Below, one piece after another: positions 40,722 to 63,019 of a stretch of DNA of 64,000 nucleotides. The number at the start of each line of letters is the position of its first letter. The first letter of the stretch is position 1. The position numbers and the translations under genes were made by a program. Source of the stretch: Octopus sinensis (lineage: Eukaryota); NCBI RefSeq assembly GCF_006345805.1, contig NC_043008.1:25234001-25298000 (forward strand). The letters run 5' to 3'. Under the pieces are notes generated by a model, which was not told where the DNA came from, did no database searches, and saw only the letters and a program-made list of their open reading frames with translations.

Positions 40722-41025
40722 TAATAATACTTAGAGGTACTACTTCTACTGCTACGACAATGACCACTAACAACAACAACAATACTAAAGGTGATCAAGA
40801 TGAAGATAGCAGGAAAATTATCTTATTTAGGGTTAAAAGTTCTATTGCCACCACCATCACCACTAGCAACAATAATTAAGGTGCTGACAATGATGATGAT
40901 GACAATTGAAATATAAAAATATAAAAATCTCTGACAAAGGCTATTTACAACATTTCTAAAAATAACCCAACAATTGCTGCTTCGGCCAGGGTCAAGATAC
41001 AGGACTCTTGACATGTCCAACAAAG

Positions 41026-41153
41026 CGTGACGCCTAAACCAATCAGCTCAACCAACCAATCAGCTTAAGTAATTGAGTGATACTACACACTGATTGGTCA
41101 GAATACAGTTTGCAAAACCTAGCCCTCTGGAGCCTACCCAGCTGTATTTATAG
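41026..41153 (+). promoter_or_regulatory. Putative pLTR Pol II promoter
   Basis: CCAATCAG at 41039 and 41056, inverted CTGATTGG at 41090, TATTTATAG at 41145, about 65 nt upstream of the hammerhead. Confidence 0.45.
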
Positions 41154-41215
41154 CACAGAATCAATCATCTTGCTACAGTCAAAAATTGTGAAGCATGACT
41201 GTCACCACTACTACA

Positions 41216-41260
41216 TGAACCTGAAGATTGCAGAATTTAATGCATGAAAGTACTACTTCA
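41216..41260 (+). ncRNA. Minimal hammerhead ribozyme (slightly decayed)
   Basis: UGAAc-CUGAAGA-uUGCA-gaauuuaa-UGCAu-GAAA-GUAC-UA-cUUCA. Palindromic AGUACU stem III; mismatches at the base of stems I and II. Confidence 0.65.
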
Positions 41261-41407
41261 ATCAGAATGAACATTTAACATTCTACTATTTTATTTTATT
41301 TTATTCTATTATAATATATCATTATAAGATTGTAAATAAAACGTGAAAATCAGACAAGGTTGGAATTCCTTTTATTAATATATTCTTCTATACACAATCA
41401 CACACAC

Positions 41408-41458
<51 letters not shown>

Positions 41459-43433
41459 TACAGGCACACACATCTCATCATTGACAAATGACCTCCTAAA
41501 TGTTAGTGACAATGGCTGTCTGCTATACCCACGCTGAAATTTAAGTCAACAACTTGCCTAATACTTCTAAGTCTCACCTACAATGCCAAATATTTAGGAA
41601 ATGAGCAAGTACAGGATCTACTGCTGTTTTATAATGAGGTAAGTGTTATTTCACAATTTCTATCTGTTATAGAGATATCTAAAGTAATGGTCTCTCATCT
41701 CTAGCTTTTAAATGACCATTGACTCTGCTGTATTCGTCCATTCTTTGGCAGGTTTTATTTTCCGTCCTGCATAGTGTCCAACAGTAAACCCTCTTCACTA
41801 ATACAGCTCCGTAGGGTTTCCAGTTTAGTTGTTAATGGTCCAACCTTGTGACACGTTCTACTTGGTTTTTTGCTTTCATGTTATCAGTAGTACTAAGAGT
41901 GACCATACATTCATAGAAACACACACACTCACAAAAACACACACACACACATACATACACACACACACATACATACACACACACACACATACGTACACAC
42001 ACACAACTGTGTGTTTAGTTACATATATATATAAACGTTTTCATGAACGTGTGTATATGTATATACTTATAAATGTTAATATATAAATGTATATATGTGA
42101 AGGTGGATGTCGACTTTTACATGCCGAAAAGCTATATCTGATACAGAACTATATATTATATGAACGATGTCTTTTTCAAATTCTTTCTATATCATATCTA
42201 AAAACATTTACATATTGTTAAAACAAGTCACATCACATCACTTTAATATGAATTACTATGTGCTATAAATAGAAATTCATCAGTCATTCTAGACAATATG
42301 TTCTCTAAGAAAATTTTTTGATTATTTTGAGCAGATTATTCCTAGGTGAGTTTGAACATGATTTATTTGTTTAAAATTAATGCATAAAGCAAAATGACAG
42401 TTGGCAAGATATTTGATGTATTTGGTCTATTTATTTCTGTCTTATTTTTTTGTTCATTTATTCTGCTTATTAATTTTCTTGTTTATTTACTTTTGCATTT
42501 ATTAATTGTTTGTTTATTTGTTTAGTTCTCAAGTTTGTTATTATTTGACGTTTATTTTATTTTATTGTTTGAAATGTTAATTTAGATTTTCAATAATATA
42601 TTTTGTGCCAGTAGACAAAAAAGCCAGCATAACTAAAACATGAAATTATAATTTACAGTTATCTATAATAAACATTTTATCTAATCTTTTTTTCTCCAGG
42701 ATTCCCTGCATCTGTAATGGCATCCTTTCTTACCCATAACTACTAATTTTTATTGATTCAAACTACACATTAGCTAAATTAAGTTTAACCAGTTAATCTA
42801 GCTAAGAAGGTTTGAAAATTGTATGATATCTGGCTGTTTTACACATTGATAAATATAAATAAAAAGAAAATATAACTGACATTATCCTGTAACTTAACAG
42901 ATGGTTTGAGTATTCGGGTTACACATGGGCTAATCAGTAGATTTGGATGCTATTTTCTCTAAAAATAGTTCTCTATAAATGTGAAATCTGTAACATACAA
43001 TCTGAAATGTTGAAACCTCAACATATGTGTTGTAGATAGCATTTCAACTGAAAGTTTTCAATGTGTCTATTGATTATTTAAAGTAGTAGAAACAATTTTG
43101 TTGATTTGGGGAATTGAACTGCAGAGTCAAAGCAACTGGGAATGTAAGTCTAAACATGGAATAAGCAATCAACTTGAAATAACTGAGCTGTTCAAAAGAA
43201 CCTTCATTTGAATATTTTACAGATATCAAGCATTCTTAATGTATATTGATGTCTAAATCTGTGATAGTATTTCTATGGGACATAGGAATCATATTGCATA
43301 ATCTAATGATCAATACCCTAACCAAGGATGAAATATTAAGAACAACAGGCTCATTTCATTATTATGGGCATATTGTTTAAGGCTTAAAACATGGGTCAAC
43401 TGTTTAAAAGTATGAATATTAAGGAGTTGAAAG

Positions 43434-46828: not shown

Positions 46829-47353
46829 CATTATTGTTGTTGTTGTTGTTGTTGTTGCCCAAAACTAAAACAGAAGGAGGGCACTACTCACTTCATACAA
46901 GCATCACCCACATCACAACAGCTGAAGTAACTACAGAAGAAACTCCACGAAAAGAAAGCAGAGAGGGATCCAGCCAACATACCACCAACACCACCACCAC
47001 CACCACCAACTACATGAGAGACAACAACGCCAACAACAAAAGATGCGCTTAACACAACCACCTCCACATCACCTACAAAAGCACCATCAATGCGGTTCTT
47101 GCTAGAGGAATAAACAACATCAGTGAATTTCGACCCACTGGAACTATCTCTTACTGACTCTGACCCCTCAGACATGTGTGGAGAGGCTGACAGAATTGAG
47201 TGGACAGAAGTCACACGTAAAAGGCTAAGAAAAAGGCACAACAGTAGACCATACTGTTGATATACAAATATGCTATTCTTGATCCTAACCTTGTGTAATT
47301 ATTATTAAAATATCTTTGATTTAATTGGATCCTGCAAATATGTATGTACATAT

Positions 47354-47411
<58 letters not shown>

Positions 47412-47424
47412 ATATAATATATAT

Positions 47425-47463
<39 letters not shown>

Positions 47464-47549
47464 AAGGGTGAAAAGGAACACACGAGTTGATATATATGAA
47501 AAAAAAGTAAAAAATAGAAAATGCTAAAATAATTTTATAGTGAACATTT

Positions 47550-47587
47550 CAGTACCGGTTTCGGGCATTTTGAGACCTTTTCAACTG
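47550..47587 (-). ncRNA. Minimal hammerhead (U3-A8), copy in the inverted tail
   Basis: Reverse complement of 53473-53510. Confidence 0.7.
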
Positions 47588-48262
47588 TAACGATTAAATA
47601 ATTAAATTTAGAAAAATTAGAAGAAACGTTTTTTTAAAAGAATATTTCTATAGTAGTGTTCAGATTTAAGTGGCATTCTGCCTTTCTCTGACTCCCTTGT
47701 TTGCACTTGTGTGTTCGAGGTAGTTGTGAGTTCTTGGTAGGGTAGTAGAGGGAAGGCTGGTGAGGAAAGGGGGGTGGGAGAATCTGGGAGTGCCCTGATG
47801 GTCGTATTTTGAATGGTCAGTGGCGGCTGGCAGTCTCAGTTCAATTCAGGAGAATATTTATATTGACAGGCTTGTTTATAGAATTAGCGTAGGTGTTATA
47901 CTAAAAAACATTAGTGACAAACTTAAGGGGTAGGGGGTGGAGAAGAAGAAGAAGAAGGAGAAAGAGAAGGAGAAGATGACGATGATGGTGATGGTGGTGA
48001 TGATTATGACGACGATGATGATGAAGGAGGAGAAGGAGAAGATGGTGGTGATGATGGTGGTGATGATGATGATGCCGATGATGATGATAACGATGATGAT
48101 GAAGAAGAAGAGGAAGAAGAAGAAGAAGAAAAAAACAGAGAAGGGAGAATATGAATGGGTGTAAATATAGCTATGAAGGGGCTGATTAGTAATGGATTCT
48201 ATGGAGTGTAGTATTTGTGTGTGTATATATATTTTTTTCTTTTATTCTAAAGTTGAGGTATA

Positions 48263-48976
48263 TTAATTGTTTGTCGTAGACCCGTTAAGAAGTGGCTTGT
48301 ATTTTGTAATAAAGAGATTTTCTTTACTTATTCGTTGTCTCGAGGTTGTATCGTCCCTAAATTGGTAGAGGGGGAAAATTCTGAAGTTTGGTGTTTTTTT
48401 GTTGGCGCAAGTATCTATGTGTTGGCTAAAAGCTATTTTTCTGTTTTGGGGAATTTTTATCTGGGATCTGTGCAGGGCCATTCGTTTACGCAAACCATTT
48501 TTTGTTTGGCCTATGTACTGCTCTTGACACCCGGAGCAGGTTAGTGAGTATATTAGGTTCTCCGAAGCACATGTGAAGTTGCTTTTCACTGTAAAACGTT
48601 GTCCCTGTTTGAAGGAGAACTCAGAACCCTCGATTAGATAGTCGCATATCCCGCAATTGGGTCTTCCACATTTTTTTACTGTCGGCTTCTGTGTTGAAGA
48701 GTGAATTCGGGCTTGTGTAAGGAGACTTTTCATGGATCTAGGCTGTCTTTTGCTTTTTATGATCGTGTGTGTTTGGAGGATTGTGTTCATTCTGTGGTCT
48801 TTTTTTAGGAGGGGTATGTTGTGGAGGATGGTGTCGAAGGCTTCGTTATTGAGAGTGTTGTGTGTGGAGATGTATGGTAAGGCTTTTGGTTGTAAGTTTT
48901 TCTTTGATTTGGGATGTCTCAGTTCCTTGATGTTAAGTTGAAGGGCACGTTGAATGCATTTGTCAATAAGTGAAGG
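48263..48976 (-). CDS. Open-frame PLE C-terminal segment (RT thumb/linker, Cys motif, GIY-YIG)
   Basis: 238 uninterrupted codons: PSLIDKCIQRALQL...KKCGRPNCGIC...LIYSLTCSGCQEQYIGQT...FITKYKPLLN. Confidence 0.85.
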   Translation of the reverse strand, partial: PSLIDKCIQRALQLNIKELRHPKSKKNLQPKALPYISTHNTLNNEAFDTILHNIPLLKKDHRMNTILQTHTIIKSKRQPRSMKSLLTQARIHSSTQKPTVKKCGRPNCGICDYLIEGSEFSFKQGQRFTVKSNFTCASENLIYSLTCSGCQEQYIGQTKNGLRKRMALHRSQIKIPQNRKIAFSQHIDTCANKKTPNFRIFPLYQFRDDTTSRQRISKENLFITKYKPLLNGSTTNN

Positions 48977-49153
48977 CTCACCAGCCTTCCCTCTACTACC
49001 CTACCAAGAACTCACAACTACCTCGAACACACAAGTGCAAACAAGGGAGTCAGAGAAAGGCAGAATGCCACTTAAATCTGAACACTACTATAGAAATATT
49101 CTTTTAAAAAAACGTTTCTTCTAATTTTTCTAAATTTAATTATTTAATCGTTA

Positions 49154-49191
49154 CAGTTGAAAAGGTCTCAAAATGACCGAAACCGGTACTG
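49154..49191 (+). ncRNA. Minimal hammerhead in the 5' pLTR (UUGAAAA core)
   Basis: CAG-UUGAAAA-GGUC-ucaaaau-GACC-GAAA-CCGG-UA-CUG; palindromic ACCGGU stem III; stem I extends cguu/aaug. Confidence 0.78.
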
Positions 49192-49311
49192 AAATGTTCA
49201 CTATAAAATTATTTTAGCATTTTCTATTTTTTACTTGTTTTTTCATATATATCAACTCGTGTGTTCCTTTTCACCCTTATACATATCATTAACCCACACG
49301 AGATACAGAAA

Positions 49312-52300
49312 ATGCCGACAAAAACAGACACAATCACCTCCATAAACGAAGAAATACTGAAAGAACTCAAGAAAATCAACACAAATTTGTCAACTTTTTT
49401 GAACGAATTCGACTCGACACTTCAACCCAATCGAGAGAACAATGAAGAAACAGATACGAAAAATACAACCTCCGAAATTGTCGAAAACCTTGGAAACTTA
49501 TGCGAAACAATTAGAACATTTTTCTCTAACAACGCTAACCAAGGACCTCCAAACGAGTCAATATATGGGATCAATACTCTAACAACATACCAAATGAAAC
49601 ACCACATAATACCACAATGGAACAAATCATCAGAGATAGAAAGTTCGCCTTTTGGAAGATGATCCAAAACAACAACAAAGCGGATATATACGAAAAATGG
49701 CTCAACCGGACCCCGTTAATCCTCCCACGTAAATTCCAGTTCAAAGCTATTACAGAAGAACCTGAAACACAAAGACACCTCAGGGAGAGAATGGTACTGG
49801 AAAAAATGAAAATGGAAATAGAACTTCTGAAATGAGGGCCCAAACGAATGAGGATAAAAAAATCCACCGATGAAGATATCAACGAAGAAATTCGCAAAAT
49901 GACCCAAGGCCCAGATCAAGAGAAGTTCTCCAAACTATGGAAAGAGGACTGTGAAAAAGAAGACCTAAAATCTCTCCAACGCTGGGAGAAAAGCGCCACT
50001 TGGTTCTCAGAATATGAAGCCGTCTTTCAAACAGAGCACGCCTCCAACAACCCTTTCCAGAAAATAAGAAAACCAAAACAACACCCAAACACCGATACAC
50101 ACCTGTCTAAAAATCGGAACCTTCACTACTATCAAAAAAAGAATACAGGACCTAACCCTAACTCTGTAAGCAGCCAGCGATACAATATCAGGATACCCCA
50201 CTTCAAGCAGAGAAGGATAAATCAACACCCACAGCATAGACACTGCAACCTCATCCCCACCCAAAGGAGTTACCAACGAAATCTTCGTCCCATTAACCGG
50301 TTAAACAACCATGCCACAACAAACCCACACCACTTGCAATGATTACCAACGAAGGCCTCCTAGACCACCACACCCGAATATGGGATATCGGGATGCTCTC
50401 CTCAATACTGCTCCAAGAACACACACCATAAATCACAACAGGAGACCCCTAATCAACAAAGAACAACTATATACTAGCTACCGTCCCAACCACACGCATT
50501 CATTTTTTAGACCCAATACGCAAACACAGAGACACAAGATAGCACCAAACAAGCAGGAGGAACCAAAAGTTATAAAATTATTAATCTAACTCACAAGGAA
50601 CTAACAGCAAACCAAATAAACATACTTTCCAAAGGACTCCAGTTACACCCCCCCCCACAACACCCCAACTACAATGAAATGAAAGAAGACATCGCAGAAT
50701 TCTGCAGAAAATTAAGACTTACTGAGGAGCTATACGATAAATACAACGAGCACGAATCGTTAGCCAGAAATAGGAGTAACTACACCCCCTCGAAAGGTAA
50801 GAATAAAACACTTGATGATTTCTGTGACCACATATCAAATTACCCATATCAACATATGCACAAACAAAAACACAAACCAAACTTCAGCAAAAAAGAATGG
50901 CTGAGTTGAACAAATTAAAACTAGATAAAACAATAACAATCAAAGAGGCCGATAAAGGGAGTGCTGTTGTCTTAATGGATACGACATTTTACATAACTTT
51001 GGTACTTTCTATGCTGGAAGACACAACATACTATGAAAAGGCACCAAAACTACAGTCAACAAAAAATAATGAGGGAACTAAAATCCATATTAAACCCATA
51101 CAAAGCAGGGCTAACCGACAAAGAATATGATTATATGACCAATTTCACAAGTAAAACTAGCCAATTCTACGGTATACCTGAGATCCACAAGTGAAAAAAT
51201 AAGCAACGCATGCAAGATAGCTACAGAAAAAAATAATTAAAGTCCCTAATCCTAATGACCTCAAATTGAGACCCATAATAGCAGGTCCCGCATGCGAAAC
51301 CCACCGCCTCAGTAACTTTTTAGACACCCTGTTAAAACCACTCCTCAAACATGTCAAAAGCTATATAAGGGACGACTTAGATATGCTCAATCACCTACCG
51401 AATACTATAAACAAAAAACACCATACTGGTATCCTTCGATGTAGTCAACCTCTACTCCAATATCCCCCACAACCTAGGACTAGAGGCAATCCAATTCTGG
51501 CTAGAGAATCACGCCAACGAACTACCACACCGCCATCAAAAAAGAATTGTGATAGAGAAGGGTTTAAATTCATCCTGGAAAATAACTTCTTCGCCTTCAA
51601 TGACAACTTCTACCGACAAAAATCGGGGACTGCGATGGGTACACGAATGGCCCCCTCCTTTGCCAACCTAGTCATAGGATACCTAGAGATCAGTCTGTAT
51701 CGTAAGGTTCTAGAAAGATATGGCAGCCCTTTCTCCATCTACATAGAAAACAACTGGAAGAGATATCTAGTGACTGTTTCATCCTTTGGCATAAAAATAT
51801 AGAAAAACTCATAGAATTCCAGAAAATTTTAAACGGACTGGACGTAAACATCCAATTCACGATGGAATATAGCCAACAACAACTCCCCTTCCTCGATATC
51901 CTCATTAAGAAAGCTAATATATATAATAGAAACAGACATATACTATAAGCCTACAGACTCTAAGCAATATCTTCAATTCAATTCATGCCACCAGACACAC
52001 CAGGATGAATATCCCCTACAAGAACTAAAGATACCCTAATCACCAGGAACTATCCACCTTCACTTATTGACAAATGCATTCAACGTGCCCTTCAACTTAC
52101 ATCAAGGAACTGAGACATCCCAAATCAAAGAAAAACTTACAACCAAAAGCCTTACCATACATCTCCACACACAACACTCTCAATAACGAAGCCTTCGACA
52201 CCATCCTCCACAACATACCCCTCCTAAAAAAAGACCACAGAATGAACACAATCCTCCAAACACACACGATCATAAAAAGCAAAAGACAGCCTAGATCCAT

Positions 52301-52773
52301 GAAAAGTCTCCTTACACAAGCCCGAATTCACTCTTCAACACAGAAGCCGACAGTAAAAAAAATGTGGAAGACCCAATTGCGGGATATGCGACTATCTAAT
52401 CGAGGGTTCTGAGTTCTCCTTCAAACAGGGACAACGTTTTACAGTGTGAAAAGCAACTTCACATGTGCTTCGGAGAACCTAATATACTCACTAACCTGCT
52501 CCGGGTGTCAAAGGCAGTACATAGGCCAAACAAAAAATGGTTTGCGTAAACGAATGGCCCTGCACAGATCCCAGATAAAAATTCCCCAAAACAGAAAAAT
52601 AGCTTTTAGCCAACACATAGATACTTGCGCCAACAAAAAAAACACCAAACTTCAGAATTTTCCCCCTCTACCAATTTAGGGACGATACAACCTCGAGACA
52701 ACGAATAAGTAAAGAAAATCTCTTTATTACAAAATACAAGCCACTTCTTAACGGGTCTACGACAAACAATTAA
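49312..52773 (+). pseudogene. PLE polyprotein (long N-terminal region, RT, GIY-YIG), ~1150 codons, frameshifted
   Basis: IKEADKGSAVVLMD, RPIIAGP, SFDVVNLYSNIP, YRQKSGTAMGTRMAPSFANL, WKRYL, LPFLDILI, YYKPTDSKQYL and LIYSLTCSGCQRQYIGQT, spread across shifted frames. Confidence 0.92.
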
Positions 52774-52884
52774 TATATCTCAACTTTAGAATAAAAGAAA
52801 AAAATATATATACACACACAAATACTACACTCCATAGAATCCATTACTAATCAGCCCCTTCATAGCTATATTTACACCCATTCA

Positions 52885-53120
52885 TATTCTCCCTTCTCTG
52901 TTTTTTTCTTCTTCTTCTTCTTCCTCTTCTTCTTCATCATCATCGTTATCATCATCATCGGCATCATCATCATCGCCACCATCATCACCACCATCTTCTC
53001 CTTCTCCTCCTTCATCATCATCGTCGTCATAATCATCACCACCATCACCATCATCGTCATCTTCTCCTTCTCTTTCTCTTCTTCTTCTCTTCTTCTTCTT
53101 CTTCTTCTTCTTCTTCTTCT
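52885..53120. repeat. Composite (CTT)/(CAT)/(CAC) trinucleotide tract in the PLE 3' UTR
   Basis: Visible; mirrored at 47938-48135 with different (GAA) lengths. Confidence 0.9.
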
Positions 53121-53472
53121 CCACCCCCTACCCCTTAAGTTTGTCACTAATGTTTTTTAGTATAACACCTACGCTAATTCTATAAACAAGCCTGTCAATA
53201 TAAATATTCTCCTGAATTGAACTGAGACTGCCAGCCGCCACTGACCATTCAAAATACGACCATCAGGGCACTCCCAGATTCTCCCACCCCCTTTCCTCAC
53301 CAGCCTTCCCTCTACTACCCTACCAAGAACTCACAACTACCTCGAACACACAAGTGCAAACAAGGGAGTCAGAGAAAGGCAGAATGCCACTTAAATCTGA
53401 ACACTACTATAGAAATATTCTTTTAAAAAAACGTTTCTTCTAATTTTTCTAAATTTAATTATTTAATCGTTA

Positions 53473-53510
53473 CAGTTGAAAAGGTCTCAAAATGCCCGAA
53501 ACCGGTACTG
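53473..53510 (+). ncRNA. Minimal hammerhead in the 3' pLTR (stem II mismatch GGUC/GCCC)
   Basis: Same as 49154-49191 except A to C in the 3' strand of stem II. Confidence 0.7.
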
Positions 53511-53763
53511 AAATGTTCACTATAAAATTATTTTAGCATTTTCTATTTTTTACTTGTTTTTTCATATATATAACATTATATAATTAGGGTTTAGTAAAAT
53601 AAATTACTTTGCCACATACTGAACTTTCTAGAAATAGCAGCCAAAAAAGTTTTTTAGCCATTTCCACTACTTAAAGAAAATTTATCTCAGATAATGTTTA
53701 CTCAAAATAACTCACGAAGGTATGGAGGTAAAAACAGAAAAATATCACAAGTACAAAGATTAT

Positions 53764-53824
53764 TTGAGAACGTTAACGTTTCTAGATTAGCCAAATAAAT
53801 TCAGCATTTCTTTCGTCAGCTCAA
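53764..53824 (-). ncRNA. Hammerhead-like motif, left arm of the palindrome
   Basis: UUGAG-CUGACGA-[30-nt stem II: aga/ucu, gcug/uggc]-GAAA-CGUUAACG-UU-CUCAA. Stem III is the perfect palindrome ACGUUAACGU. The base of stem II is an A/A mismatch. Confidence 0.6.
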
Positions 53825-54053
53825 CATTTCTTATTTTGGATTTGGAAGCACTAAAAAGAAAGAACATACCCTTCGTTGACTTATCACCTCAGATGAACCC
53901 GTTCAGACTGCCAGTGCTAACAAATTCAAAATATGCAAGCGAAGATTCTCTGAATTTGTCGGTACTGGCAGTCTGAACGGGTCATCTGAGGTGATAAGTC
54001 GCCAAAGGGTGTGTTCTTTCTTTTTAGTGCTTCCAAATCCAAAATAAGAAATG

Positions 54054-54114
54054 TTGAGCTGACGAAAGAAATGCTGAATTTATTTGGCTAATCTAGAAAA
54101 GTTAACGTTCTCAA
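54054..54114 (+). ncRNA. Hammerhead-like motif, right arm (C to A at 54100 in stem III)
   Basis: Mirror of 53764-53824. Confidence 0.5.
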
Positions 54115-54422
54115 ATAATCTTTGTACTTGTGATATTTTTCTGTTTTTACCTCCATACCTTCGTGAGTTATTTTGAGTATACATTATCTGAGAGAAATTT
54201 TCTTTAAGTAGTGGAAATGGCTAAAAAACTTTTTTGGCTGCTATTTCTAGAAAGTTCAGTATGTGGCAAAGTAATTTATTTTACTAAGCCCTAATTATAT
54301 AATGTAATATTTTGAATTCACCTTAAATGGTCCTTTTACATACTGAATACTTGGTGAAATTGATTAATAACTAATTAATTTTACCCTCAATTGTTGATAT
54401 ATATATATATATATATATATAT

Positions 54423-54791
54423 GGATGGAAGCACTCCGTCGGTTACAACAACGAGGGTTCTGGTTGATCCGAATCAACGGAACAGCCTGCTCGTGAAATT
54501 AACGTGTAAGTGGCTGAGCACTCCACAGACACGTGTACCCTTAACGTAGTTCTCAGGGATATTCAGCATGACACAGAGAGTGACAAGGCCGGCCCTTTGA
54601 AATGCAGGTACAACAGAAACAGGAAGTAAGAGTGAGAGAAAGTTGTGGTGAAAGAGTACAGCAGGGATCACCACCATCCCGTACCGGAGCCTCGTGGAGC
54701 TTTAGGTGTTTTCGCTCAATAAACACTCACAACGCCCGGTCTGGGAATCAAAACCGCGATCCTATGACCGCGAGTCCGCTGCCCTAACCAC
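54423..54791 (-). mobile_element. tRNA-derived SINE (second family)
   Basis: Minus-strand head gtggttagggcagcggactc...ggttttgattcccagaccggg has A- and B-box-like motifs; flanked by (TA)n. Confidence 0.7.
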
Positions 54792-54792
54792 G

Positions 54793-54793
54793 C

Positions 54794-54860
<67 letters not shown>

Positions 54861-54862
54861 AT

Positions 54863-54900
<38 letters not shown>
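54793..54900. repeat. (TA)n tract flanking the array on the left
   Basis: Directly visible. Confidence 0.95.
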
Positions 54901-54901
<1 letters not shown>

Positions 54902-55022
54902 CAACAATCAAGGAACGGCCATAATAGGCCATTCACCCACTAGAAATAACAGCCAAAGCTTCAACCGCAAATAAAAATCAATTCCGTAAACAGGAGAAAA
55001 TTTAAAAAACATTTACCCTGTA

Positions 55023-55129
55023 ATTTCTTATACGATGCACCGTTTCATCTGCTGTTTAATGGTAAACTAACCTGATTAAATTAAATCAAGCCAATCTTCC
55101 ATAGGCCCTCAGATTCTTCAGTAAGAAAT
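55023..55129 (-). ncRNA. Type I hammerhead ribozyme in array unit 1 (repeated in every unit)
   Basis: Minus strand: AUUUCUUA-CUGAAGA-AUCUG-[58 nt]-CAGAU-GAAA-CGG-UGCA-UCG-UA|UAAGAAAU. Stem I 8 bp, stem II 5 bp, stem III 4 bp, GUA cleavage triplet. Confidence 0.85.
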
Positions 55130-58100
55130 AGCCCAAGTCGGAACAGATATTTTCACGGGGCATTTCCAACCCTGCCAAGGTAATATCTGACCTAAAATTT
55201 TCAAATCATCGCACTCGCGCCAAATTTATCGGCAGCAAATAAATATAAGCCGTCGATTCCATTACGGAATTAACCAGAAAATTCATAATTAATCAATATA
55301 GTGTGCCAAAAAAAAATTTTGTGGAATTTTTTTGCCACCAGCGGCCTAGTGGGAAAAAATTAAATAGTCATAGACCATTTTTAAGTTCAACATCAACAAT
55401 CAAGGAACGGCCATAATAGGCCATTCACCCACTAGAAATAACAGCCAAAGCTTCAACCGCAAATAAAAATCAATTCCGTAAACAGGAGAAAATTTAAAAA
55501 ACATTTACCCTGTAATTTCTTATACGATGCACCGTTTCATCTGCTGTTTAATGGTAAACTAACCTGATTAAATTAAATCAAGCCAATCTTCCATAGGCCC
55601 TCAGATTCTTCAGTAAGAAATAGCCCAAGTCGGAACAGATATTTTCACGAGGCATTTCCAACCCTGCCAAGGTAATATCTGACCTAAAATTTTCAAATCA
55701 TCGCACTCGCGCCAAATGTATCGGCAGCAAATAATATAAGCCGTCGATTCCATTACGGAATTAACCAGAAAATTCATAATTAATCAATATAGGGTGGCAA
55801 AAAAAAATTTTGTAGAATTTTTTTGCCACCAGCGGCCTAGTGGGAAAAAATTAAATAGTCATAGACCATTTTTAAGTTCAACATCAACAATCAAGGAACG
55901 GCCATAATAGGCCATTCACCCACTAGAAATAACAGCCAAAGCTTCAACCGCAAATAAAAATCAATTCCGTAAACAGGAGAAAATTTAAAAAACATTTACC
56001 CTGTAATTTCTTATACGATGCACCGTTTCATCTGCTGTTTAATGGTAAACTAACCTCATTAAATTAAATCAAGCCAATCTCCATAGGCCCTCAGATTCTT
56101 CAGTAAGAAATAGCCCAAGTCGGAACAGATATTTTCACGAGGCATTACCAACCCTGACAAGGTAATATCTGACCTAAAATTTTCAAATCATCGCACTCGC
56201 GCCAATTTATCGGCAGCAAATAAATATAAGCCGTCGATTCCATTACGGAATTAACCAGAAAATTCATAATTAATCAATATAGAGTGCCAAAAAAAAATTT
56301 TGTAGAATTTTTTTGCCACCAGCGGCCTAGTGGGAAAAAATTAAATAGTCATAGACAATTTTTAAGTTCAACATCAACAATCAAGGAACGGCCATAATAG
56401 GCCATTCACCCACTAGAAATAACAGCCAAAGCTTCAACCGCAAATAAAAATCAATTCCGTAAACAGGAGAAAATTTAAAAAAAATTTACCCTGTAATTTC
56501 TTATACGATGCACCGTTTCATCTGCTGTTTAATGGTAAACTAACCTCATTAAATTAAATCAAGCCAATCTTCCATAGGCCCTCAGATTCTTCAGTAAGAA
56601 ATAGCCCAAGTCGGAACAGATATTTTCACGAGGCATTACCAACCCTGCCAAGGTAATATCTGACCTAAAATTTTCAAATCATCGCACTCGCGCCAAATTT
56701 ATCGGCAGCAAATAAATATAAGCCGTCGATTCCATTACGGAATTAACCAGAAAATTCATAATTAATCAATATAGAGTGCCAAAAAAAAATTTTGTAGAAT
56801 TTTTTTGCCACCAGCGGCCTAGTGGGAAAAAATTAAATAGTCATAGACCATTTTTAAGTTCAACATCAACAATCAAGGAACGGCCATAATAGGCGCTTCA
56901 CCCACTAGAAATAACAGCCAAAGCTTCAACCGCAAATAAAAATCAATTCCGTAAACAGGAGAAAATTTAAAAAACATTTACCCTGTAATTTCTTATACGA
57001 TGCACCGTTTCATCTGCTGTTTAATGGTAAACTAACCTGATTAAATTAAATCAAGCCAATCTTCCATAGGCCCTCAGATTCTTCAGTAAGAAATAGCCCA
57101 AGTCGGAACAGATATTTTCACGAGGCATTTCCAACCCTGCCAAGGTAATATCTGACCTAAAATTTTCAAATCATCGCACTCGCGCCAAATTTATCGGCAG
57201 CAAATAAATATAAGCCGTCGATTCCATTACGGAATTAACCAGAAAATTCATAATTAATCAATATAGGGTGGCAAAAAAAAATTTTGTAGAATTTTTTTGC
57301 CACCAGCGGCCTAGTGGGAAAAAATTAAATAGTCATAGACCATTTTTAAGTTCAACATCAACAATCAAGGAACGGCCATAATAGGCCATTCACCCACTAG
57401 AAATAACAGCCAAAGCTTCAACCGCAAATAAAAATCAATTCCGTAAACAGGAGAAAATTTGAAAAACATTTACCCTGTAATTTCTTATACGATGCACCGT
57501 TTCATATCTGTTTAATGGTAAACTAACCTGATTAAATTAAATCAAGCCAATCTTCCATAGGCCCTCAGATTCTTCAGTAAGAAATACCCCAAGTCGGAAC
57601 AGATATTTTCACGAGGCATTTCCAACCTGCCAAGGTAATATCTGACCTAAAATTTTCAAATCATCGCACTCGCGCCAAATTTATCGGCAGCAAATAAAAT
57701 AAGCCGTTGATTCCATTACGGAATTAACCAGAAAATTCATAATTAATCAATATAGGGTGGCAAAAAAAATTTTATAGAATTTTTTTGCCACCAGTGGCCT
57801 AGTGGGAAAAAATTAAATAGTCATAGACCATTTTTAAGTTCAACATCAACAATCAAGGAACGGCCATAATAGGCGCTTCACCCACTAGAATAACAGCCAA
57901 AGCTTCAACCGCAAATAAAAATCAATTCCGTAAACAGGAGAAAATTTAAAAAACATTTACCCTGTAATTTCTTATACGATGCACCGTTTCATCTGCTGTT
58001 TAATGGTAAACTAACCTGATTAAATTAATCAAGCCAATCTTCCATAGGCCCTCAGATTCTTCAGTAAGAAATAGCCCAAGTCGGAACAGATATTTTCACG

Positions 58101-61100
58101 AGGCATTTCCAACCCTGCCAAGGTAATATCTGACCTAAAATTTTCAAATCATCGCACTCGCGCCAAATTTATCGGCAGCAAATAAATATAAGCCGTCGAT
58201 TCCATTACGGAATTAACCAGAAAATTCATAATTAATCAATATAGGGTGGCCAAAAAAAATTTTGTAGAATTTTTTTGCCACCAGCGGCCTAGTGGGAAAA
58301 AATTAAATAGTCATAGACCATTTTTAAGTTCAACATCAACAATCAAGGAACGGCCATAATAGGCCATTCACCACTAGAAATAACAGCCAAAGCTTCAACC
58401 GCAAATAAAAATCAATTCCGTAAACAGGAGAAAATTTAAAAAACATTTACCGGTAATTTCTTATACGATGCACCGTTTCATCTGCTGTTTAATGGTAAAC
58501 TAACCTGATTAAATTAAATCAAGCCAATCTTCCATAGGCCCTCAGATTCTTCGGTAAGAAATAGCCCAAGTCGGAACAGATATTTTCACGAGGCATTTCC
58601 AACCTGCCAAGGTAATATGTGACCTAAAATTTTCAAATCATCGCACTCGCGCAAATTTATCGGCAGCAAATAAATATAAGCCGTCGATTCCATTACGGAA
58701 TTAACCAGAAAATTCATAATTAATCAATATAGGGTGGCAAAAAAAAATTTTGTAGAATTTTTTTGCCACCAGCGGCCTAGTGGCAAAAAATTAAATAGTC
58801 ACAGACCATTTTTAAGTTCAACATCAACAATCAAGGAACGGCCATTCACCCACTAGAAATAACAGCCAAAGATTCAACCGCAAATAAAAATCAATTCCGT
58901 AAACAGGAGAAAATTAAAAAAACATTTACCCTGTAATTTCTTATACGATGCACCGTTTCATCTGCTGTTTAATGGTAAACTAACCTGATTAAATTAAATC
59001 AAGCCAATCTTCCATAGGCCCTCAGATTCTTCAGTAAGAAATAGCCCAAGTCGGAACAGATATTTTCACGAGGCATTTCCAACCCTGCCAAGGTAATATC
59101 TGACCTAAAATTTTCAAATCATCGCACTCGCGCCAAATTTATCGGCAGCAAATAAATATAAGCCGTCGATTCCATTACGGAATTAACCAGAAAATTCATA
59201 ATTAATCAATATAGGGTGGCAAAAAAAAATTTTGTAGAATTTTTTTGCCACCAGCGGCCTAGTGGGAAAAAATTAAATAGTCATAGACCATTTTTAAGTT
59301 CAACATCAACAATCAAGGAACGGCCATAATAGGCCATTCACCCACTAGAAATAACAGCCAAAGCTTCAACCGCAAATAAAAATCAATTCCGTAAACAGGA
59401 GAAAATTTAAAAAACATTTACCCGGTAATTTCTTATACGATGCACCGTTTCATCTGCTGTTTAATGGTAAACTAACCTGATTAAATTAAATCAAGCCAAT
59501 CTTCCATTGGCCCTCAGATTCTTCGGTAAGAAATAGCCCAAGTCGGAACAGATATTTTCACGAGGCATTTCCAACCCTGCCAAGGTAATATGTGACCTAA
59601 AATTTTCAAATCATCGCACTCGCGCCAAATTTATCGGCAGCAAATAAATATAAGCCGTCGATTCCATTACGGAATTAACCAGAAAATTCATAATTAATCA
59701 ATATAGGGTGGCAAAAAAAAATTTTGTAGAATTTTTTTGCCACCAGCGGCCTAGTGGCAAAAAATTAAATAGTCACAGACCATTTTTAAGTTCAACATCA
59801 ACAATCAAGGAACGGCCATTCACCCACTAGAAATAACAGCCAAAGATTCAACCGCAAATAAAAATCAATTCCGTAAACAGGAGAAAATTAAAAAACATTT
59901 ACCCTGTAATTTCTTATACGATGCACCGTTTCATCTGCTGTTTAATGGTAAACTAACCTGATTAAATTAAATCAAGCCAATCTTCCATAGGCCCTCAGAT
60001 TCTTCAGTAAGAAATAGCCCAAGTCGGAACAGATATTTTCACGAGGCATTTCCAACCCTGCCAAGGTAATATCTGACCTAAAATTTTCAAATCATCGCAC
60101 TCGCGCCAAATTTATCGGCAGCAAATAAATATAAGCCGTCGATTCCATTACGGAATTAACCAGAAAATTCATAATTATCAATATAGGGTGCCAAAAAAAA
60201 TTTTGTAGAATTTTTTTGCCACCAGCGGCCTAGTGGGAAAAATTAAATAGTCATAGACCATTTTTAAGTTCAACATCAGCAATCAAGGAACGGCCATAAT
60301 AGGCCATTCACCCACTAGAAATAACAGCCGAAGCTTCCACCGCAAATAAAAATCAATTCCGTAAACAGGAGAAAATTTAAAAAACATTTACCCTGTAATT
60401 TCTTATACGATGCACCGTTTCATCTGCTGTTTAATGGTAAACTAACCTGATTAAATAAATCAAGCCAATCTTCCATAGGCCCTCAGATTCTTCAGTAGAA
60501 TAGCCAAGTCGGAACTATTGTTCACGATGCATTTCCACCCTGCCAAGGTAATATGTGACCTAAAATTTTCAAATCATCGCACTCGCGCCAAATTTATCGG
60601 CAGCAAATAATATAAGCCGTCGATTCCATTACGGAATTAACCAGAATATTCATAATTATCAATATAGGGTGCCACAAAAAATTTTGTAGAATTTTTTTGC
60701 CACCAGGCGGCCTAGTGGTTGAAATTAAATAGTCATAGACCATTTTTAAGTTCAACATCAACAATCAAGAACGGCCATAATAGGCCATTCACCCACTAGA
60801 AATAACAGCCAAAGCTTCAAAACCGCAAATAAAAATCAATTCCGTAAACAGGAGAAAATTTAAAAAACATTTACCCCCTGTAATTTCTTATACGATGCAC
60901 CGTTTCATCTGCTGTTTATGTAATAAGTAAACTACCTGATTAATTAAATTAAATCAAGCCAATCTTCCATTGCCCCTCAGATTCTTCAGTAAGAAATAGC
61001 CCAAGTCAGAACAGATATTTTCACGAGGCATTTCCAACCACCCTGCCAAGGTAAAATCTGACCTAAAATTTTCAAATCATCGCACTCGCGCCAATTTATC

Positions 61101-62576
61101 GGCAGCAAATAAATATAAGCCGTCGATTCCATTACGGAATTAACCAGAAAATTCATAATTAATCAATATAGGGTGGCAAAAAAAATTTTGTAGAATTTTT
61201 TTGCCACCAGCGGCCTAGTGGGAAAAAATTAAATAGTCATAGACCATTTTTAAGTTCAACATCAACAATCAAGGAACGGCCATAATAGGCCATTCACCCA
61301 CTAGAAATAACAGCCAAAGCTTCAACCGCAAATAAAAATCAATTCCGTAAACAGGAGAAAATTTAAAAAACATTTACCCTGTAATTTCTTATACGATGCA
61401 CCGTTTCATCTGCTGTTTAATGGTAAACTAACCTGATTAAATTAAATCAAGCCAATCTTCCATAGGCCCTCAGATTCTTCAGTAAGAAATAGCCCAAGTC
61501 GGAACAGATATTTTCACGAGGCATTTCCAACCCTGCCAAGGTAATATGTGACCTAAAATTTTCAAATCATCGCACTCGCGCCAAATTTATCGGCAGCAAA
61601 TAAATATAAGCCGTCGATTCCATTACGGAATTAACCAGAAAATTCATAATTATGGCCGTTCCTTGATTGTTGATGTTGAACTTAAAAATGGTCTATGACT
61701 ATTTAATTTTTTCCCACTAGACCGCTGGTGGCAAAAAAATTCTACAAAATTTTTTTTTGGCACCCTATATTGATTAATTATGAATTTTCTGGTTAATTCC
61801 GTAATGGAATCGACGGCTTATTTGCTGCCGATAAATTTGGCGCGAGTGCGATGATTTGAAAATTTTAGGTCAGATATTACTTTGGCAGGGTTGGAAATGC
61901 CTCGTGAAATTAAATAGTCATAGACCATTTTTAAGTTCAACATCAACAATCAAGGAACGGCCATAATAGGCCATTCACCCACTAGAAATAACAGCCAAAG
62001 CTTCAACCGCAAATAAAAATCAATTCCGTAAACAGGAGAAAATTTAAAAAACATTTACCCTGTAATTTCTTATACGATGCACCGTTTCATCTGCTGTTTA
62101 ATGGTAAACTAACCTGATTAAATTAAATCAAGCCAATCTTCCATAGGCCCTCAGATTCTTCAGTAAGAAATAGCCCAAGTCGGAACAGATATTTTCACGA
62201 GGCATTTCCAACCCTGCCAAGGTAATATCTGACCTAAAATTTTCAAATCATCGCACTCGCGCCAAATTTATCGGCAGCAAATAAATATAAGCCGTCGATT
62301 CCATTGATTGTTGATGTTGAACTTAAAAATGGTCTATGACTATTTAATTTTTTCCCACTAGGCCGCTGGTGGCAAAAAAATTCTACAAAATTTTTTTTTT
62401 GCACCCTATATTGATTAATTATGAATTTTCTGGTTAATTCCGTAATGGAATCGACGGCTATATTATTTGTTGCTGCCGATAAATTTGCGCGAGTGCGATG
62501 ATTTGAAAATTTTAGGTCACATATTACCTGGCAGGGTTGGAAATGCCTCGTGAAAATATCTGTTCCGACTTGGGCT

Positions 62577-62683
62577 ATTTCTTACTGAAGAATCTGAGGG
62601 CCTATGGAAGATTGGCTTGATTTAATTTAATCAGGTTAGTTTACCATTAAACAGCAGATGAAACGGTGCATCGTATAAGAAAT
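62577..62683 (+). ncRNA. Type I hammerhead, plus-strand copy in the inverted end of the array
   Basis: atttctta ctgaaga atctg...cagat gaaa cggtgcatcg ta taagaaat, read directly on the + strand. Confidence 0.85.
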
Positions 62684-62912
62684 TACAGGGTAAATGTTTT
62701 TTAAATTTTCTCCTGTTTACGGAATTGATTTTTATTTGCGGTTGAAGTTTTGGCTGTTATTTCTAGTGGGTGAATGGCCTATTATGGCCGTTCCTTGATG
62801 TTGATGTTGAACTTAAAAATGGTCTATGACTATTTAATTTTTTCCCACTAGGCCGCTGGTGGCAAAAAAATTCTACAAAACTTTTTTTTGCCACCCTATA
62901 TTGATTAATTAT

Positions 62913-62936
62913 AGATATATATATATATATATACAT

Positions 62937-63019
<83 letters not shown>

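What the first reader, a model, noticed from the sequence alone, without database searches (positions are those of the whole stretch)
54901..62912. 8-kb satellite whose ~490-bp monomer encodes a complete hammerhead ribozyme: candidate non-LTR retrozyme array
Seen: each unit contains, on the minus strand, all conserved hammerhead nucleotides in the correct order (C3U4G5A6A7G8A9, G12A13A14, A15.1-U16.1, A17) with three formable helices. There are 16 copies, at a spacing equal to the unit length. Known: tandem HHR repeats of this kind (newt satellite 2, Schistosoma Sm-alpha, Dolichopoda pDo500, metazoan non-LTR retrozymes) give monomer-length and often circular RNAs. Inference: read-through transcription here would be cut into ~490-nt monomers that may circularise and be retrotransposed. 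I am not aware of such an array being described in a cephalopod, and the unit is longer than the retrozyme monomers I recall.
Basis: partly seen in the sequence, partly recalled or inferred. Interest (0 to 1): 0.95.

Follow-up and report, generated by a model that had tools for sequence, protein, structure and literature searches.

The report
Hammerhead-ribozyme tandem repeat (retrozyme) in octopus-like genome
An 8-kb block of 492-bp repeats in an octopus-like genome carries a complete self-cutting hammerhead RNA motif in most units, so it looks like a new cephalopod example of the known "retrozyme" class of small parasitic elements that spread through circular RNAs.

Summary
Window 54900-62912 is a 492-bp satellite inserted in a (TA)n microsatellite. 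It carries 16 hammerhead (HHR) motifs, 15 on the minus strand and 1 on the plus strand, and 12 are fully intact.

The motif is a type I HHR:
- 8-bp helix I and core CUGAAGA
- 5-bp helix II extended into a 68-nt arm, then GAAA
- a weak helix III whose 12 nt are self-complementary

A motif this good is expected about 1e-5 times per monomer by chance. Two successive HHRs are predicted to fold into a classic double hammerhead.

The unit has no ORF and 36% GC. Its HHR-sense strand folds far better than shuffled sequence (z = -4). The distal 1.26 kb of the array holds inverted, truncated unit pieces, so both outer ends are 3' ends. Two other elements in the same (TA)n tract show the same layout: a Penelope-like element and a 742-bp HHR-like palindrome.

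The best reading is a non-LTR retrozyme mobilised by Penelope-like elements, a new member of a known kind. Cleavage, circles and mobility are untested. Rfam finds no hammerhead here, but it also misses a compact Octopus bimaculoides PLE hammerhead. The unit length is not unusual, since known retrozymes span 51-972 bp.

The parts
54900..62912 (-). Whole 492-bp satellite / candidate retrozyme array (8.0 kb)
   Evidence: TRF; monomer BLAST map
54900..61652 (-). Head-to-tail part. It holds a partial unit (positions 1-131) at 54900-55030, then 13 full units, then a partial unit (232-492). Unit position 1 is the first base after the HHR cut. Units are 87-100% identical to each other. Units u58464 and u59436 are 99% alike, which points to a two-unit duplication.
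55023..55129 (-). Reference hammerhead (107 nt). Helix I 5' strand 55129-55122. C3-A9 (CUGAAGA) 55121-55115. Helix II arm is 68 nt. Then G12A13A14, then helix III ACGGUGCAUCGU, then A17 at 55031. The cut is 55031|55030. Helix I 3' strand 55030-55023.
55031..62073 (-). Predicted cleavage-site A17 of the 15 minus-strand HHRs, at + coordinates 55031, 55523, 56014, 56504, 56996, 57488*, 57975, 58464*, 58944, 59436*, 59917, 60406*, 60891, 61392, 62073 (* = defective motif).
61649..61912 (+). Inverted unit fragment (unit positions 106-375), joined on both sides through 4-6 nt of overlap.
61907..62305 (-). Direct-orientation fragment (unit 260-492 plus 1-166) with an intact HHR (cut at 62073).
62299..62912 (+). 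Inverted 1.25-unit fragment (unit 116-492 plus 1-238) with an intact HHR on the plus strand (C3 at 62585, cut 62675|62676). Its 3' end abuts (TA)n.
54794..54901 (.). Left flanking (AT)~55 microsatellite, taken to be half of the target site.
62910..63019 (.). Right flanking (TA)~55 microsatellite, taken to be the other half of the target site.
47499..53571 (+). Context, candidate source of the mobilising enzymes. A Penelope-like element: full copy at 48977-53571 with 276-bp pLTRs (48977-49252 = 53296-53571), a frameshifted RT (about 50.7-51.8 kb) and a GIY-YIG EN (52074-52679). An inverted 5'-truncated copy lies at 47499-48933. The element sits next to (AT)n at 47330-47470.

Best explanation
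The array is a cephalopod member of the metazoan non-LTR retrozymes. These are non-coding, non-autonomous retroelements whose 492-nt unit encodes one type I hammerhead ribozyme on one strand (here the window's minus strand).

Proposed mechanism, with each step marked shown or inferred:
1. The minus strand is transcribed across several units (inferred).
2. Helix III is only 3 bp in cis, but its 12 nt (ACGGUGCAUCGU) are self-complementary. Two successive or separate HHRs can therefore pair into a double hammerhead with a 12-bp helix III and cut after GUA. This releases 492-nt monomers with 5'-OH and 2',3'-cyclic phosphate ends. The fold is shown by prediction. Cleavage itself is inferred from established hammerhead chemistry and from the dimer behaviour of newt and PLE hammerheads.
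3. Monomers are circularised by a host RNA ligase or by the ribozyme itself, giving a stable, highly structured circRNA in which the weak single hammerhead is largely switched off (inferred by analogy with PMC7229834).
4. A Penelope-like element RT/GIY-YIG endonuclease nicks (TA)n DNA and copies the RNA by target-primed reverse transcription. Repeated passage round the circle, or a multimeric template, gives a tandem insertion. Priming from both nicked strands, plus template switches at microhomologies, gives the inverted truncated pieces at one end. The architecture is shown. The process is inferred.
5. After insertion the array drifted neutrally and was partly reshaped by unequal exchange. 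This is shown by the two-unit duplication and by equal divergence inside and outside the HHR.
For: HHR motif:
- Complete core and three helices in 12 of 16 units, on one polarity only.
- Chance expectation about 1e-5 per monomer and 1e-3 per window.

Predicted folding:
- The isolated 107-nt segment reaches the hammerhead fold within 1.4 kcal/mol of the MFE (-29.3 vs -30.7). Helix II forms a stable 68-nt arm.
- Two HHRs cofold into a canonical double hammerhead at -75.7 against 2 x -30.7 kcal/mol. Helix III is -17.5 in trans against -0.2 in cis.
- In a 599-nt transcript spanning two successive HHRs, the MFE itself contains the 12-bp inter-unit helix III. The full double hammerhead lies 0.5 kcal/mol above it.
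- The circular monomer folds to -132.3 kcal/mol on the sense strand, against -108.7 +/- 5.8 for dinucleotide shuffles (z = -4.1). The antisense strand gives -89.4 (z = -2.6).

Element properties:
- No stop-free frame longer than 55 codons. GC is 36%.
- The array splits a (TA)n tract into about 55 + 55 repeats.
- Both outer ends are 3' ends of sense copies. Internal junctions have 4-7 nt overlaps.

PLE link:
- The same head-to-head layout in (TA)n is seen in the neighbouring PLE (47499-53571), in a 742-bp HHR-like palindrome (53568-54310), and in an O. bimaculoides PLE 3'-end pair.
- The literature reports inverted 5'-truncated copies as a PLE hallmark, and microsatellite/(TA)n insertion bias for Naiad-clade PLEs (PMC8557442).
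- PLE RT and GIY-YIG remnants lie in the window.
- PLE hammerheads of this lineage share N7=A, a non-G:C 10.1-11.1 pair, an xUA cleavage triplet and a palindromic helix III with the array's HHR.
- Short palindromic helix III and action as dimers are described for metazoan type I and PLE HHRs (PMC4209133).
- Retrozymes are reported to be PLE-derived or PLE-dependent.
Against: - No Rfam hammerhead model matches, even at E<=10 on a single 126-nt motif. The weight is low, because a compact HHR in O. bimaculoides L003 is missed as well.
- The 10.1-11.1 pair is A-U rather than the highly conserved G-C. Helix II carries a 58-nt insertion, and no canonical loop1-loop2 contacts are recognisable. Catalytic activity may therefore be low.
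- Four of 16 motifs are broken, and the HHR is no better conserved than the rest of the unit (0.024 vs 0.023 differences per nt per copy). This particular array shows no sign of selection.
- No homologous copy from any other locus or species could be retrieved. There is therefore no covariation evidence and no evidence of dispersal or copy number.
- The monomer shows no significant similarity to the PLE sequences in the window.
- The two-unit duplication shows that at least part of the array grew by DNA-level exchange.
- There are no expression data.
Confidence: 0.8

Rival explanations
1. The array is an ordinary satellite DNA expanded by unequal crossing-over. Its hammerhead is a fossil, for example of a former PLE terminal repeat or an old retrozyme, and is no longer transcribed, cleaved or mobile.
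For: - Four of 16 motifs are broken, including U4->C in two units.
- Divergence is equal inside and outside the HHR.
- A two-unit higher-order duplication is present.
- The A10.1-U11.1 pair and the oversized helix II may reduce activity.
- No other copies were found with the accessible data.
Against: - Twelve motifs are perfectly intact and most units are 96-100% identical, so the array is young.
- The sense strand keeps a strongly non-random RNA fold (z = -4.1).
- The array's ends and its inverted 5' pieces in (TA)n look like a retrotransposition product rather than in situ satellite growth.
- This rival concerns present activity only and is compatible with a retrozyme origin.
Confidence: 0.25
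2. The hammerhead-like motif is a chance arrangement in an AT-rich repeat, multiplied by tandem duplication, and has no ribozyme meaning.
For: - No Rfam hammerhead hit at any threshold.
- No covariation support is available.
- A genome of a few Gb is expected to hold tens of chance matches to a strict descriptor (about 1e-8 per nt).
Against: - Expectation is about 1e-5 for this monomer and 1e-3 for the window, and no random motif in 200 Mb was as good as the observed one.
- Several features that the descriptor did not require are also present. These are the fully self-complementary 12-nt helix III, a double-hammerhead MFE, strand-asymmetric structure, the PLE-type insertion architecture, and idiosyncrasies shared with octopus PLE hammerheads.
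- Rfam also misses the compact O. bimaculoides HHR.
Confidence: 0.04
3. The array is a set of tandem terminal repeats (pLTRs) of an autonomous Penelope-like element. In that case it would be part of a PLE rather than an independent non-autonomous element.
For: PLEs form tandem or partial-tandem copies and carry HHRs in their pLTRs. PLE copies lie 1.3 kb and 13 kb away.
Against: - Sixteen units occur with no RT or EN coding sequence between or beside them, and the longest stop-free stretch is 55 codons.
- There is no significant similarity to either PLE in the window.
- The array is separated from the nearest PLE by two other insertions and by (TA)n.
Confidence: 0.05
4. The array is a DNA copy of an RNA-replicating viroid-like or deltavirus-like circular agent.
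For: A small, highly structured unit with a self-cleaving ribozyme.
Against: - A ribozyme is present on one polarity only.
- There is no ORF.
- The unit is chromosomally embedded between host repeats, with a retrotransposon-type insertion architecture.
Confidence: 0.01

Closest known systems
Metazoan non-LTR retrozymes (Cervera & de la Pena 2020, PMC7229834: coral, mussel, axolotl; vertebrate survey bioRxiv 10.64898/2026.07.22.740005)
   Same: - Tandem short repeats with one type I HHR per unit on one strand.
- Low GC (36% here against <45-50%).
- No ORF and no LTRs.
- Co-occurrence with Penelope-like elements.
- Unit length inside the reported 51-972 bp range.
   Different: - Helix II is a 68-nt arm, against about 4 bp plus a loop in canonical metazoan HHRs.
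- The 10.1-11.1 pair is A-U.
- The host is a cephalopod. No cephalopod retrozyme description turned up in the literature searches.
- circRNA expression is not shown here.
- No similarity to a PLE pLTR was detected in the window.
Newt/axolotl satellite 2 hammerhead (HHR_Amex1) and other dimer-acting metazoan type I HHRs
   Same: Very weak helix III with a palindromic loop. Efficient cleavage is expected only as a double hammerhead between two copies. Tandem ~330-bp satellite context.
   Different: Here helix III is 3 bp plus a 6-nt loop, giving a 12-nt palindrome with one G.U pair, against 1 bp plus a tetraloop. The conserved loop1-loop2 tertiary motif is absent. Helix II is much longer.
Penelope-like element hammerheads (min-HHRs in pLTRs; PMC4209133), including the octopus PLE HHR found here (L003:106/486; decayed copy at window 41221)
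   Same: Type I topology, palindromic helix III, N7=A, a non-G:C 10.1-11.1 pair, and an xUA| cleavage triplet. Elements end in (TA)n and occur as head-to-head inverted pairs.
   Different: The array unit encodes no RT or EN and is repeated 16 times. Apart from the core there is no sequence similarity. Helix I is longer (8 bp against 4-5 bp).
Plant LTR retrozymes (PMC4918200)
   Same: Non-autonomous elements that carry an HHR and are proposed to spread through circRNA intermediates.
   Different: Plant elements have type III HHRs in two LTRs, a PBS and PPT, 4-bp TSDs, and Ty3/gypsy dependence. None of these applies here.

Membership tests
Hammerhead ribozyme (type I) | Conserved core C3 U4 G5 A6 N7 G8 A9 / G12 A13 A14 / A15.1-U16.1 / H17 (not G), in the correct order | tested here: met
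   CUGAAGA ... GAAA ... U-A| is present in 14 of 16 copies, and 12 of those also have all helices intact. Two copies have U4->C.
Hammerhead ribozyme (type I) | Three helices radiating from the core. Helices II and III are closed and helix I is open, which defines type I. | tested here: met
   Helix I is 8 bp. Helix II is 5 bp plus a long arm. Helix III is A-U, C-G, G-C. The hammerhead-constrained fold is -29.3 against an MFE of -30.7 kcal/mol, and the dimer MFE is a double hammerhead.
Hammerhead ribozyme (type I) | More than chance | tested here: met
   Two strict hits and no hits of equal quality in 200 Mb of matched random sequence. No hits in the rest of the window.
Hammerhead ribozyme (type I) | G10.1-C11.1 pair (typical and highly conserved, but not strictly defining) | tested here: not met
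   The pair is A10.1-U11.1. The octopus PLE HHR has U-A at this position. The literature calls G-C 'highly conserved'.
Hammerhead ribozyme (type I) | Match to curated covariance models (Rfam hammerhead families) | tested here: inconclusive
   No hit at the gathering score or at E<=10, even on a single 126-nt motif. A compact HHR in O. bimaculoides L003 is also missed, so the test lacks power for this class.
Hammerhead ribozyme (type I) | Compensatory base changes among homologues | not testable with these tools
   No homologue was retrievable. Within-array variants are few and none is compensatory.
Hammerhead ribozyme (type I) | Site-specific Mg2+-dependent self-cleavage | not testable with these tools
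   Needs an experiment.
Metazoan non-LTR retrozyme | Short tandem repeats, each with a type I HHR on one polarity | tested here: met
   13.8 head-to-tail units plus rearranged units. HHRs lie on the sense strand only.
Metazoan non-LTR retrozyme | Non-coding, low GC, no LTRs | tested here: met
   At most 55 stop-free codons. GC is 36%. No terminal direct repeats other than the unit itself. PBS and PPT were not specifically searched.
Metazoan non-LTR retrozyme | Unit length within the described range | tested here: met
   492 bp, against 150-450 bp and 51-972 bp.
Metazoan non-LTR retrozyme | Co-occurrence with Penelope-like elements in the genome | tested here: met
   GIY-YIG domains (Pfam) and an RT fragment with PF00078-bearing relatives. 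The PLE architecture is described.
Metazoan non-LTR retrozyme | Sequence relatedness to a PLE pLTR (reported for Xenopus families; not defining) | tested here: not met
   No significant similarity to the PLE sequences of the window or of four Octopus/ENA loci.
Metazoan non-LTR retrozyme | Expressed as monomeric linear and circular RNAs; dispersed and multiple genomic insertions | not testable with these tools
   No cephalopod genome or transcriptome search was available.
Autonomous Penelope-like element | RT plus GIY-YIG ORF between the repeats | tested here: not met
   No ORF in the array.
Plant-type LTR retrozyme | Type III HHRs within two LTRs flanking a non-coding body | tested here: not met
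   The HHR is type I, and the arrangement is a multi-copy tandem without LTRs.
Viroid-like / deltavirus-like circRNA agents | Ribozymes in both polarities; no DNA stage | tested here: not met
   The HHR is on one polarity only, and the unit is embedded in the chromosome.

The most novel reading that the evidence does not exclude
The array may represent a distinct hammerhead subclass, with a 68-nt helix II arm, an A10.1-U11.1 pair and a 12-nt palindromic helix III. Standard covariance-model annotation cannot see it. If so, cephalopod genomes, and perhaps others, would hold many uncounted retrozymes producing abundant, highly base-paired ~490-nt circRNAs. The long helix II arm could have a function of its own, such as binding the PLE RT or a host protein, or serving as a double-stranded RNA substrate in animals known for heavy RNA editing.
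Probability: 0.15. Interest if true: 0.6.

Novelty: new member of a known kind. Interest (0 to 1): 0.4.

Why it matters
- If active, this would extend retrozyme and circRNA biology to cephalopods. No description of cephalopod retrozymes turned up in the literature searches, only a count of Rfam hammerhead hits in the giant squid.
- It shows that routine Rfam annotation misses these ribozymes entirely, so counts of hammerheads and retrozymes in invertebrate genomes are probably underestimates.
- Within 16 kb, the locus holds an array, an autonomous-type PLE and a small HHR-like palindrome. All three sit in one (TA)n tract and have the same head-to-head architecture. The locus is therefore a compact natural example for testing the proposed link between retrozymes and Penelope-like elements.

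Tried and rejected
- Rfam scans at the gathering score on the whole window, at E<=10 on 8.8 kb and at E<=10 on one 126-nt motif gave no hammerhead. I do not count this as evidence of absence, because Rfam also misses a compact HHR in O. bimaculoides L003.
- An exact 22-mer scan of JGI metagenome contigs gave no hit.
- I searched the 5.8-billion-protein collection with a concatenate of all stop-free six-frame pieces of the unit. The aim was to catch spurious ORF calls on related satellites in other assemblies. It gave no hit.
- An exact-protein look-up of the window's GIY-YIG ORF, tried to identify the source record, found nothing on record.
- Four Octopus/ENA PLE loci (84.5 kb, L001-L004) were fetched and searched for the monomer. 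None contained it. They did yield an intact octopus PLE hammerhead.
- Sensitive BLAST and local alignment of the monomer against the neighbouring PLE, the palindrome and the rest of the window found only one 18-nt match (z about 3.5). I do not count this as homology.
- A test for stronger conservation of the HHR than of the rest of the unit found none.
- ARAGORN on the 370-bp insert left of the array found no tRNA. BLAST found no second copy of that insert in the window. My impression that it is a tRNA-derived SINE is therefore unverified.

Full report
**1. What is there**

Tandem Repeats Finder reports a 492-bp period from 54900 to 61652, with 13.8 copies and 96% matches. It also reports (AT)n microsatellites of about 55 repeats directly on each side, at 54794-54901 and 62910-63019.

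I cut one monomer from predicted cleavage site to predicted cleavage site and mapped it back with BLAST. The anatomy, with "sense" meaning the HHR strand, is:
- 54900-61652, sense on the minus strand: unit positions 1-131, then 13 full units, then positions 232-492.
- 61649-61912, inverted: unit positions 106-375.
- 61907-62305, sense on the minus strand: unit 260-492 plus 1-166.
- 62299-62912, inverted: unit 116-492 plus 1-238.

The three internal junctions overlap by 4-7 nt. No other copy of the unit exists in the window.

Full units are 87-100% identical to each other. Units u58464 and u59436 are 99% alike but only about 96% identical to the others, which indicates a two-unit duplication.

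**2. The hammerhead**

On the sense strand each unit reads AUUUCUUA-CUGAAGA-AUCUG[58 nt]CAGAU-GAAA-CG-GUGCAU-CG-U-A|UAAGAAAU. This gives:
- an 8-bp helix I
- the full core C3-A9 with N7=A
- helix II starting with A10.1-U11.1
- G12A13A14
- A15.1-U16.1 plus two further pairs as helix III
- a GUA cleavage triplet

There are 15 motifs on the minus strand and one on the plus strand. Twelve pass a descriptor scan. The four defective ones are two with U4->C, one with a damaged helix II 3' strand, and one with a deletion in helix I.

The descriptor finds nothing else in the window, even when relaxed. In 200 Mb of first-order Markov sequence trained on the array it found 57 relaxed hits, 2 strict hits and 0 hits of equal quality. 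The expected number is therefore about 1e-5 per monomer and 1e-3 per window.

**3. Folding**

- The isolated 107-nt segment has an MFE of -30.7 kcal/mol. This fold already contains helix I and helix II as a long 68-nt arm: 5 bp, a 2x2 loop, 1 bp, a 4x4 loop, 4 bp, a bulge, 14 bp and a hexaloop.
- The full hammerhead fold costs only 1.4 kcal/mol more.
- Helix III is negligible in cis (-0.2 kcal/mol). However, the 12 nt from A15.1 to U16.1 (ACGGUGCAUCGU) are completely self-complementary, with one G.U pair.
- Two copies cofold into a textbook double hammerhead with a 12-bp helix III: -17.5 kcal/mol for that helix, and -75.7 for the dimer against -61.4 for two monomers.
- In a 599-nt transcript containing two successive HHRs, the MFE itself contains this inter-unit helix III.

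This matches the behaviour described for newt and axolotl satellite hammerheads and for PLE hammerheads.

- The circular 492-nt sense RNA folds to -132.3 kcal/mol, against -108.7 +/- 5.8 for dinucleotide shuffles (z = -4.1).
- The antisense circle reaches only -89.4 (z = -2.6).
- In the predicted monomeric circle part of the core is paired. This fits a ribozyme that acts in multimers and is quiet in the circle. That last point is inference.

**4. Other properties of the unit**

- The longest stop-free stretch in any frame is 55 codons.
- GC is 36%.
- Differences among units are as frequent in the HHR as elsewhere, 0.024 against 0.023 per nt per copy. This array shows no selection on individual copies, as expected for genomic copies of a mobile element or a satellite.
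- Of the 116 differences, 33 are indel events. Nineteen of those are 1-2 nt changes in homopolymer runs and may partly be sequencing error.

**5. Context**

The array is the last of several insertions in what looks like one long (TA)n region running from about 47.3 to 63.0 kb.

- Immediately upstream lies a Penelope-like element.
  - The full copy is at 48977-53571, with identical 276-bp pLTRs, a frameshifted RT and a GIY-YIG endonuclease.
  - An inverted 5'-truncated copy lies at 47499-48933.
- The RT fragment's best relatives are from Octopus bimaculoides (64%) and O. sinensis. This supports a cephalopod, probably octopod, source. The species was not identified.
- Next comes a 742-bp palindrome at 53568-54310, with 332-nt arms that are 97% complementary.
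  - Each arm carries a weaker hammerhead-like motif: CUGACGA...GAAA-CGUUAACG-UU|C, with an A.A mismatch at 10.1/11.1.
- Then comes a 370-bp unclassified insert, and then the array.

In the PLE, the palindrome and the array alike, the two outer ends are 3' ends of sense copies abutting TA repeats. The literature describes inverted 5'-truncated copies and complex tandem/inverted insertions as typical of PLEs. It describes microsatellite and (TA)n targets for the Naiad clade of PLEs (PMC8557442).

A second PLE fragment has a GIY-YIG ORF at 40137-40721 and ends in (TA)n near 41410. It carries a decayed hammerhead at 41221. The homologous O. bimaculoides sequence is 79.5% identical (L003:480-708). 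There it carries an intact compact type I hammerhead, again as a head-to-head pair ending in (TA)n. That octopus PLE hammerhead shares four features with the array's HHR:
- N7=A
- a non-G:C 10.1-11.1 pair
- an xUA triplet
- a palindromic helix III

**6. Rfam**

No hammerhead family matches at the gathering score or at E<=10, even when only one motif is searched. The compact O. bimaculoides PLE hammerhead is not found either. I therefore treat the negative as a limit of the models for this class of open-helix-I, minimal-helix-III hammerheads, and not as evidence against the motif.

**7. Interpretation**

The best explanation is a non-LTR retrozyme. This is a non-coding, non-autonomous element transcribed as multimers, cut by double hammerheads into 492-nt monomers, circularised, and copied back into (TA)n DNA by PLE enzymes. 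Twin priming and template switching would explain the inverted pieces.

Shown here:
- the motif and its statistics
- the predicted folds
- the lack of coding capacity
- the insertion architecture
- the presence of PLEs

Inferred:
- transcription
- cleavage
- circularisation
- reverse transcription by a PLE

The main rival concerns activity rather than origin. It holds that the array is a decaying satellite partly grown by unequal exchange. The broken copies, the two-unit duplication and the lack of selection on the HHR support it. Pure chance, a PLE's own terminal repeats, and an RNA-replicon copy are each poorly supported (see Rival explanations).

**8. Comparison and novelty**

Retrozymes of this type are known from cnidarians, mussels, insects, fish, amphibians and reptiles. 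Their unit lengths run from 51 to 972 bp, so 492 bp is unremarkable. A giant squid genome paper counted 235 Rfam hammerhead_1 loci without further analysis. Two literature searches found no description of retrozyme arrays in cephalopods.

The unusual features here are the very long helix II arm, the A-U pair at 10.1-11.1, and invisibility to Rfam. I rate the finding as a new member of a known kind, of moderate interest.

**9. Limits**

No cephalopod genome or transcriptome could be searched with the available tools. Copy number, dispersal, covariation and expression are therefore unknown. The inverted segments could in principle be assembly artefacts.

Noticed in passing
window 53568-54310: A 742-bp palindrome with 332-nt arms (97% complementary, 79-nt spacer), flanked by TA repeats. 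Each arm carries a weaker hammerhead-like motif: UUGAG-CUGACGA-(A)AGA...UCU(A)-GAAA-CGUUAACG-UU|CUCAA. C3 is at 53819 on the minus strand and at 54059 on the plus strand, and the plus copy has GAAAAG. The palindromic helix III is PLE-like, but 10.1/11.1 is an A.A mismatch and the MFE is not a hammerhead. It may be a head-to-head insertion of another small PLE-dependent element.
   Followed up: partly
window 47499-53571: A Penelope-like element. The full copy (48977-53571) has 100% identical 276-bp pLTRs. An inverted 5'-truncated copy (47499-48933) has arms 98-100% complementary to 52099-53561 in the blocks that match. The RT/EN reading frame is split into many frames. The identical arms suggest a very recent insertion of an already broken copy, gene conversion, or indel errors in the assembly. 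No hammerhead was found in its pLTR with my descriptors.
   Followed up: partly
window 40137-41460; L003:1-720: A second PLE fragment (GIY-YIG ORF 40137-40721) whose 3' end (41215-41446) is 79.5% identical to O. bimaculoides L003:480-708. The window copy has a decayed hammerhead at 41221. The O. bimaculoides copies (L003:106 minus, 486 plus) have an intact compact type I HHR, UGAAC-CUGAAGA-UUGCA-UAAA-UGCAA-GAAA-GUAUAC-UA|GUUCA, arranged head-to-head and ending in (TA)n. Rfam does not detect it.
   Followed up: partly
L003:19979-20030 (+), O. bimaculoides CM046618.1: Another hammerhead-like motif: CUCAUA-CUGAGGA-UGGGU-AACC-ACCCA-GAAA-CCUAUG-UC|UGUGAG. It has a 6-bp helix I and a 5-bp helix II, and lies within or next to a gene whose product has a Snf7 domain. 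It could be an intronic HHR or a chance match.
   Followed up: no
window 54424-54793: A 370-bp insert between (AT)13 and (AT)55, just left of the array. It contains a B-box-like GGTTTTGATTCCC on the minus strand and looked to me like a tRNA-derived SINE. ARAGORN finds no tRNA and there is no second copy in the window, so it remains unclassified.
   Followed up: partly
window 47330-63019: At least four unrelated insertions (a PLE, the HHR-like palindrome, the 370-bp insert and the 8-kb array) are all bounded by TA dinucleotide repeats. This suggests one long (TA)n tract acting as a repeated landing site.
   Followed up: partly
window 47937-48164 and 52872-53147: Trinucleotide-rich (GAA/GAT)n-like low-complexity blocks inside the PLE's 3' region, present in both inverted arms. 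They generate long spurious ORFs.
   Followed up: no
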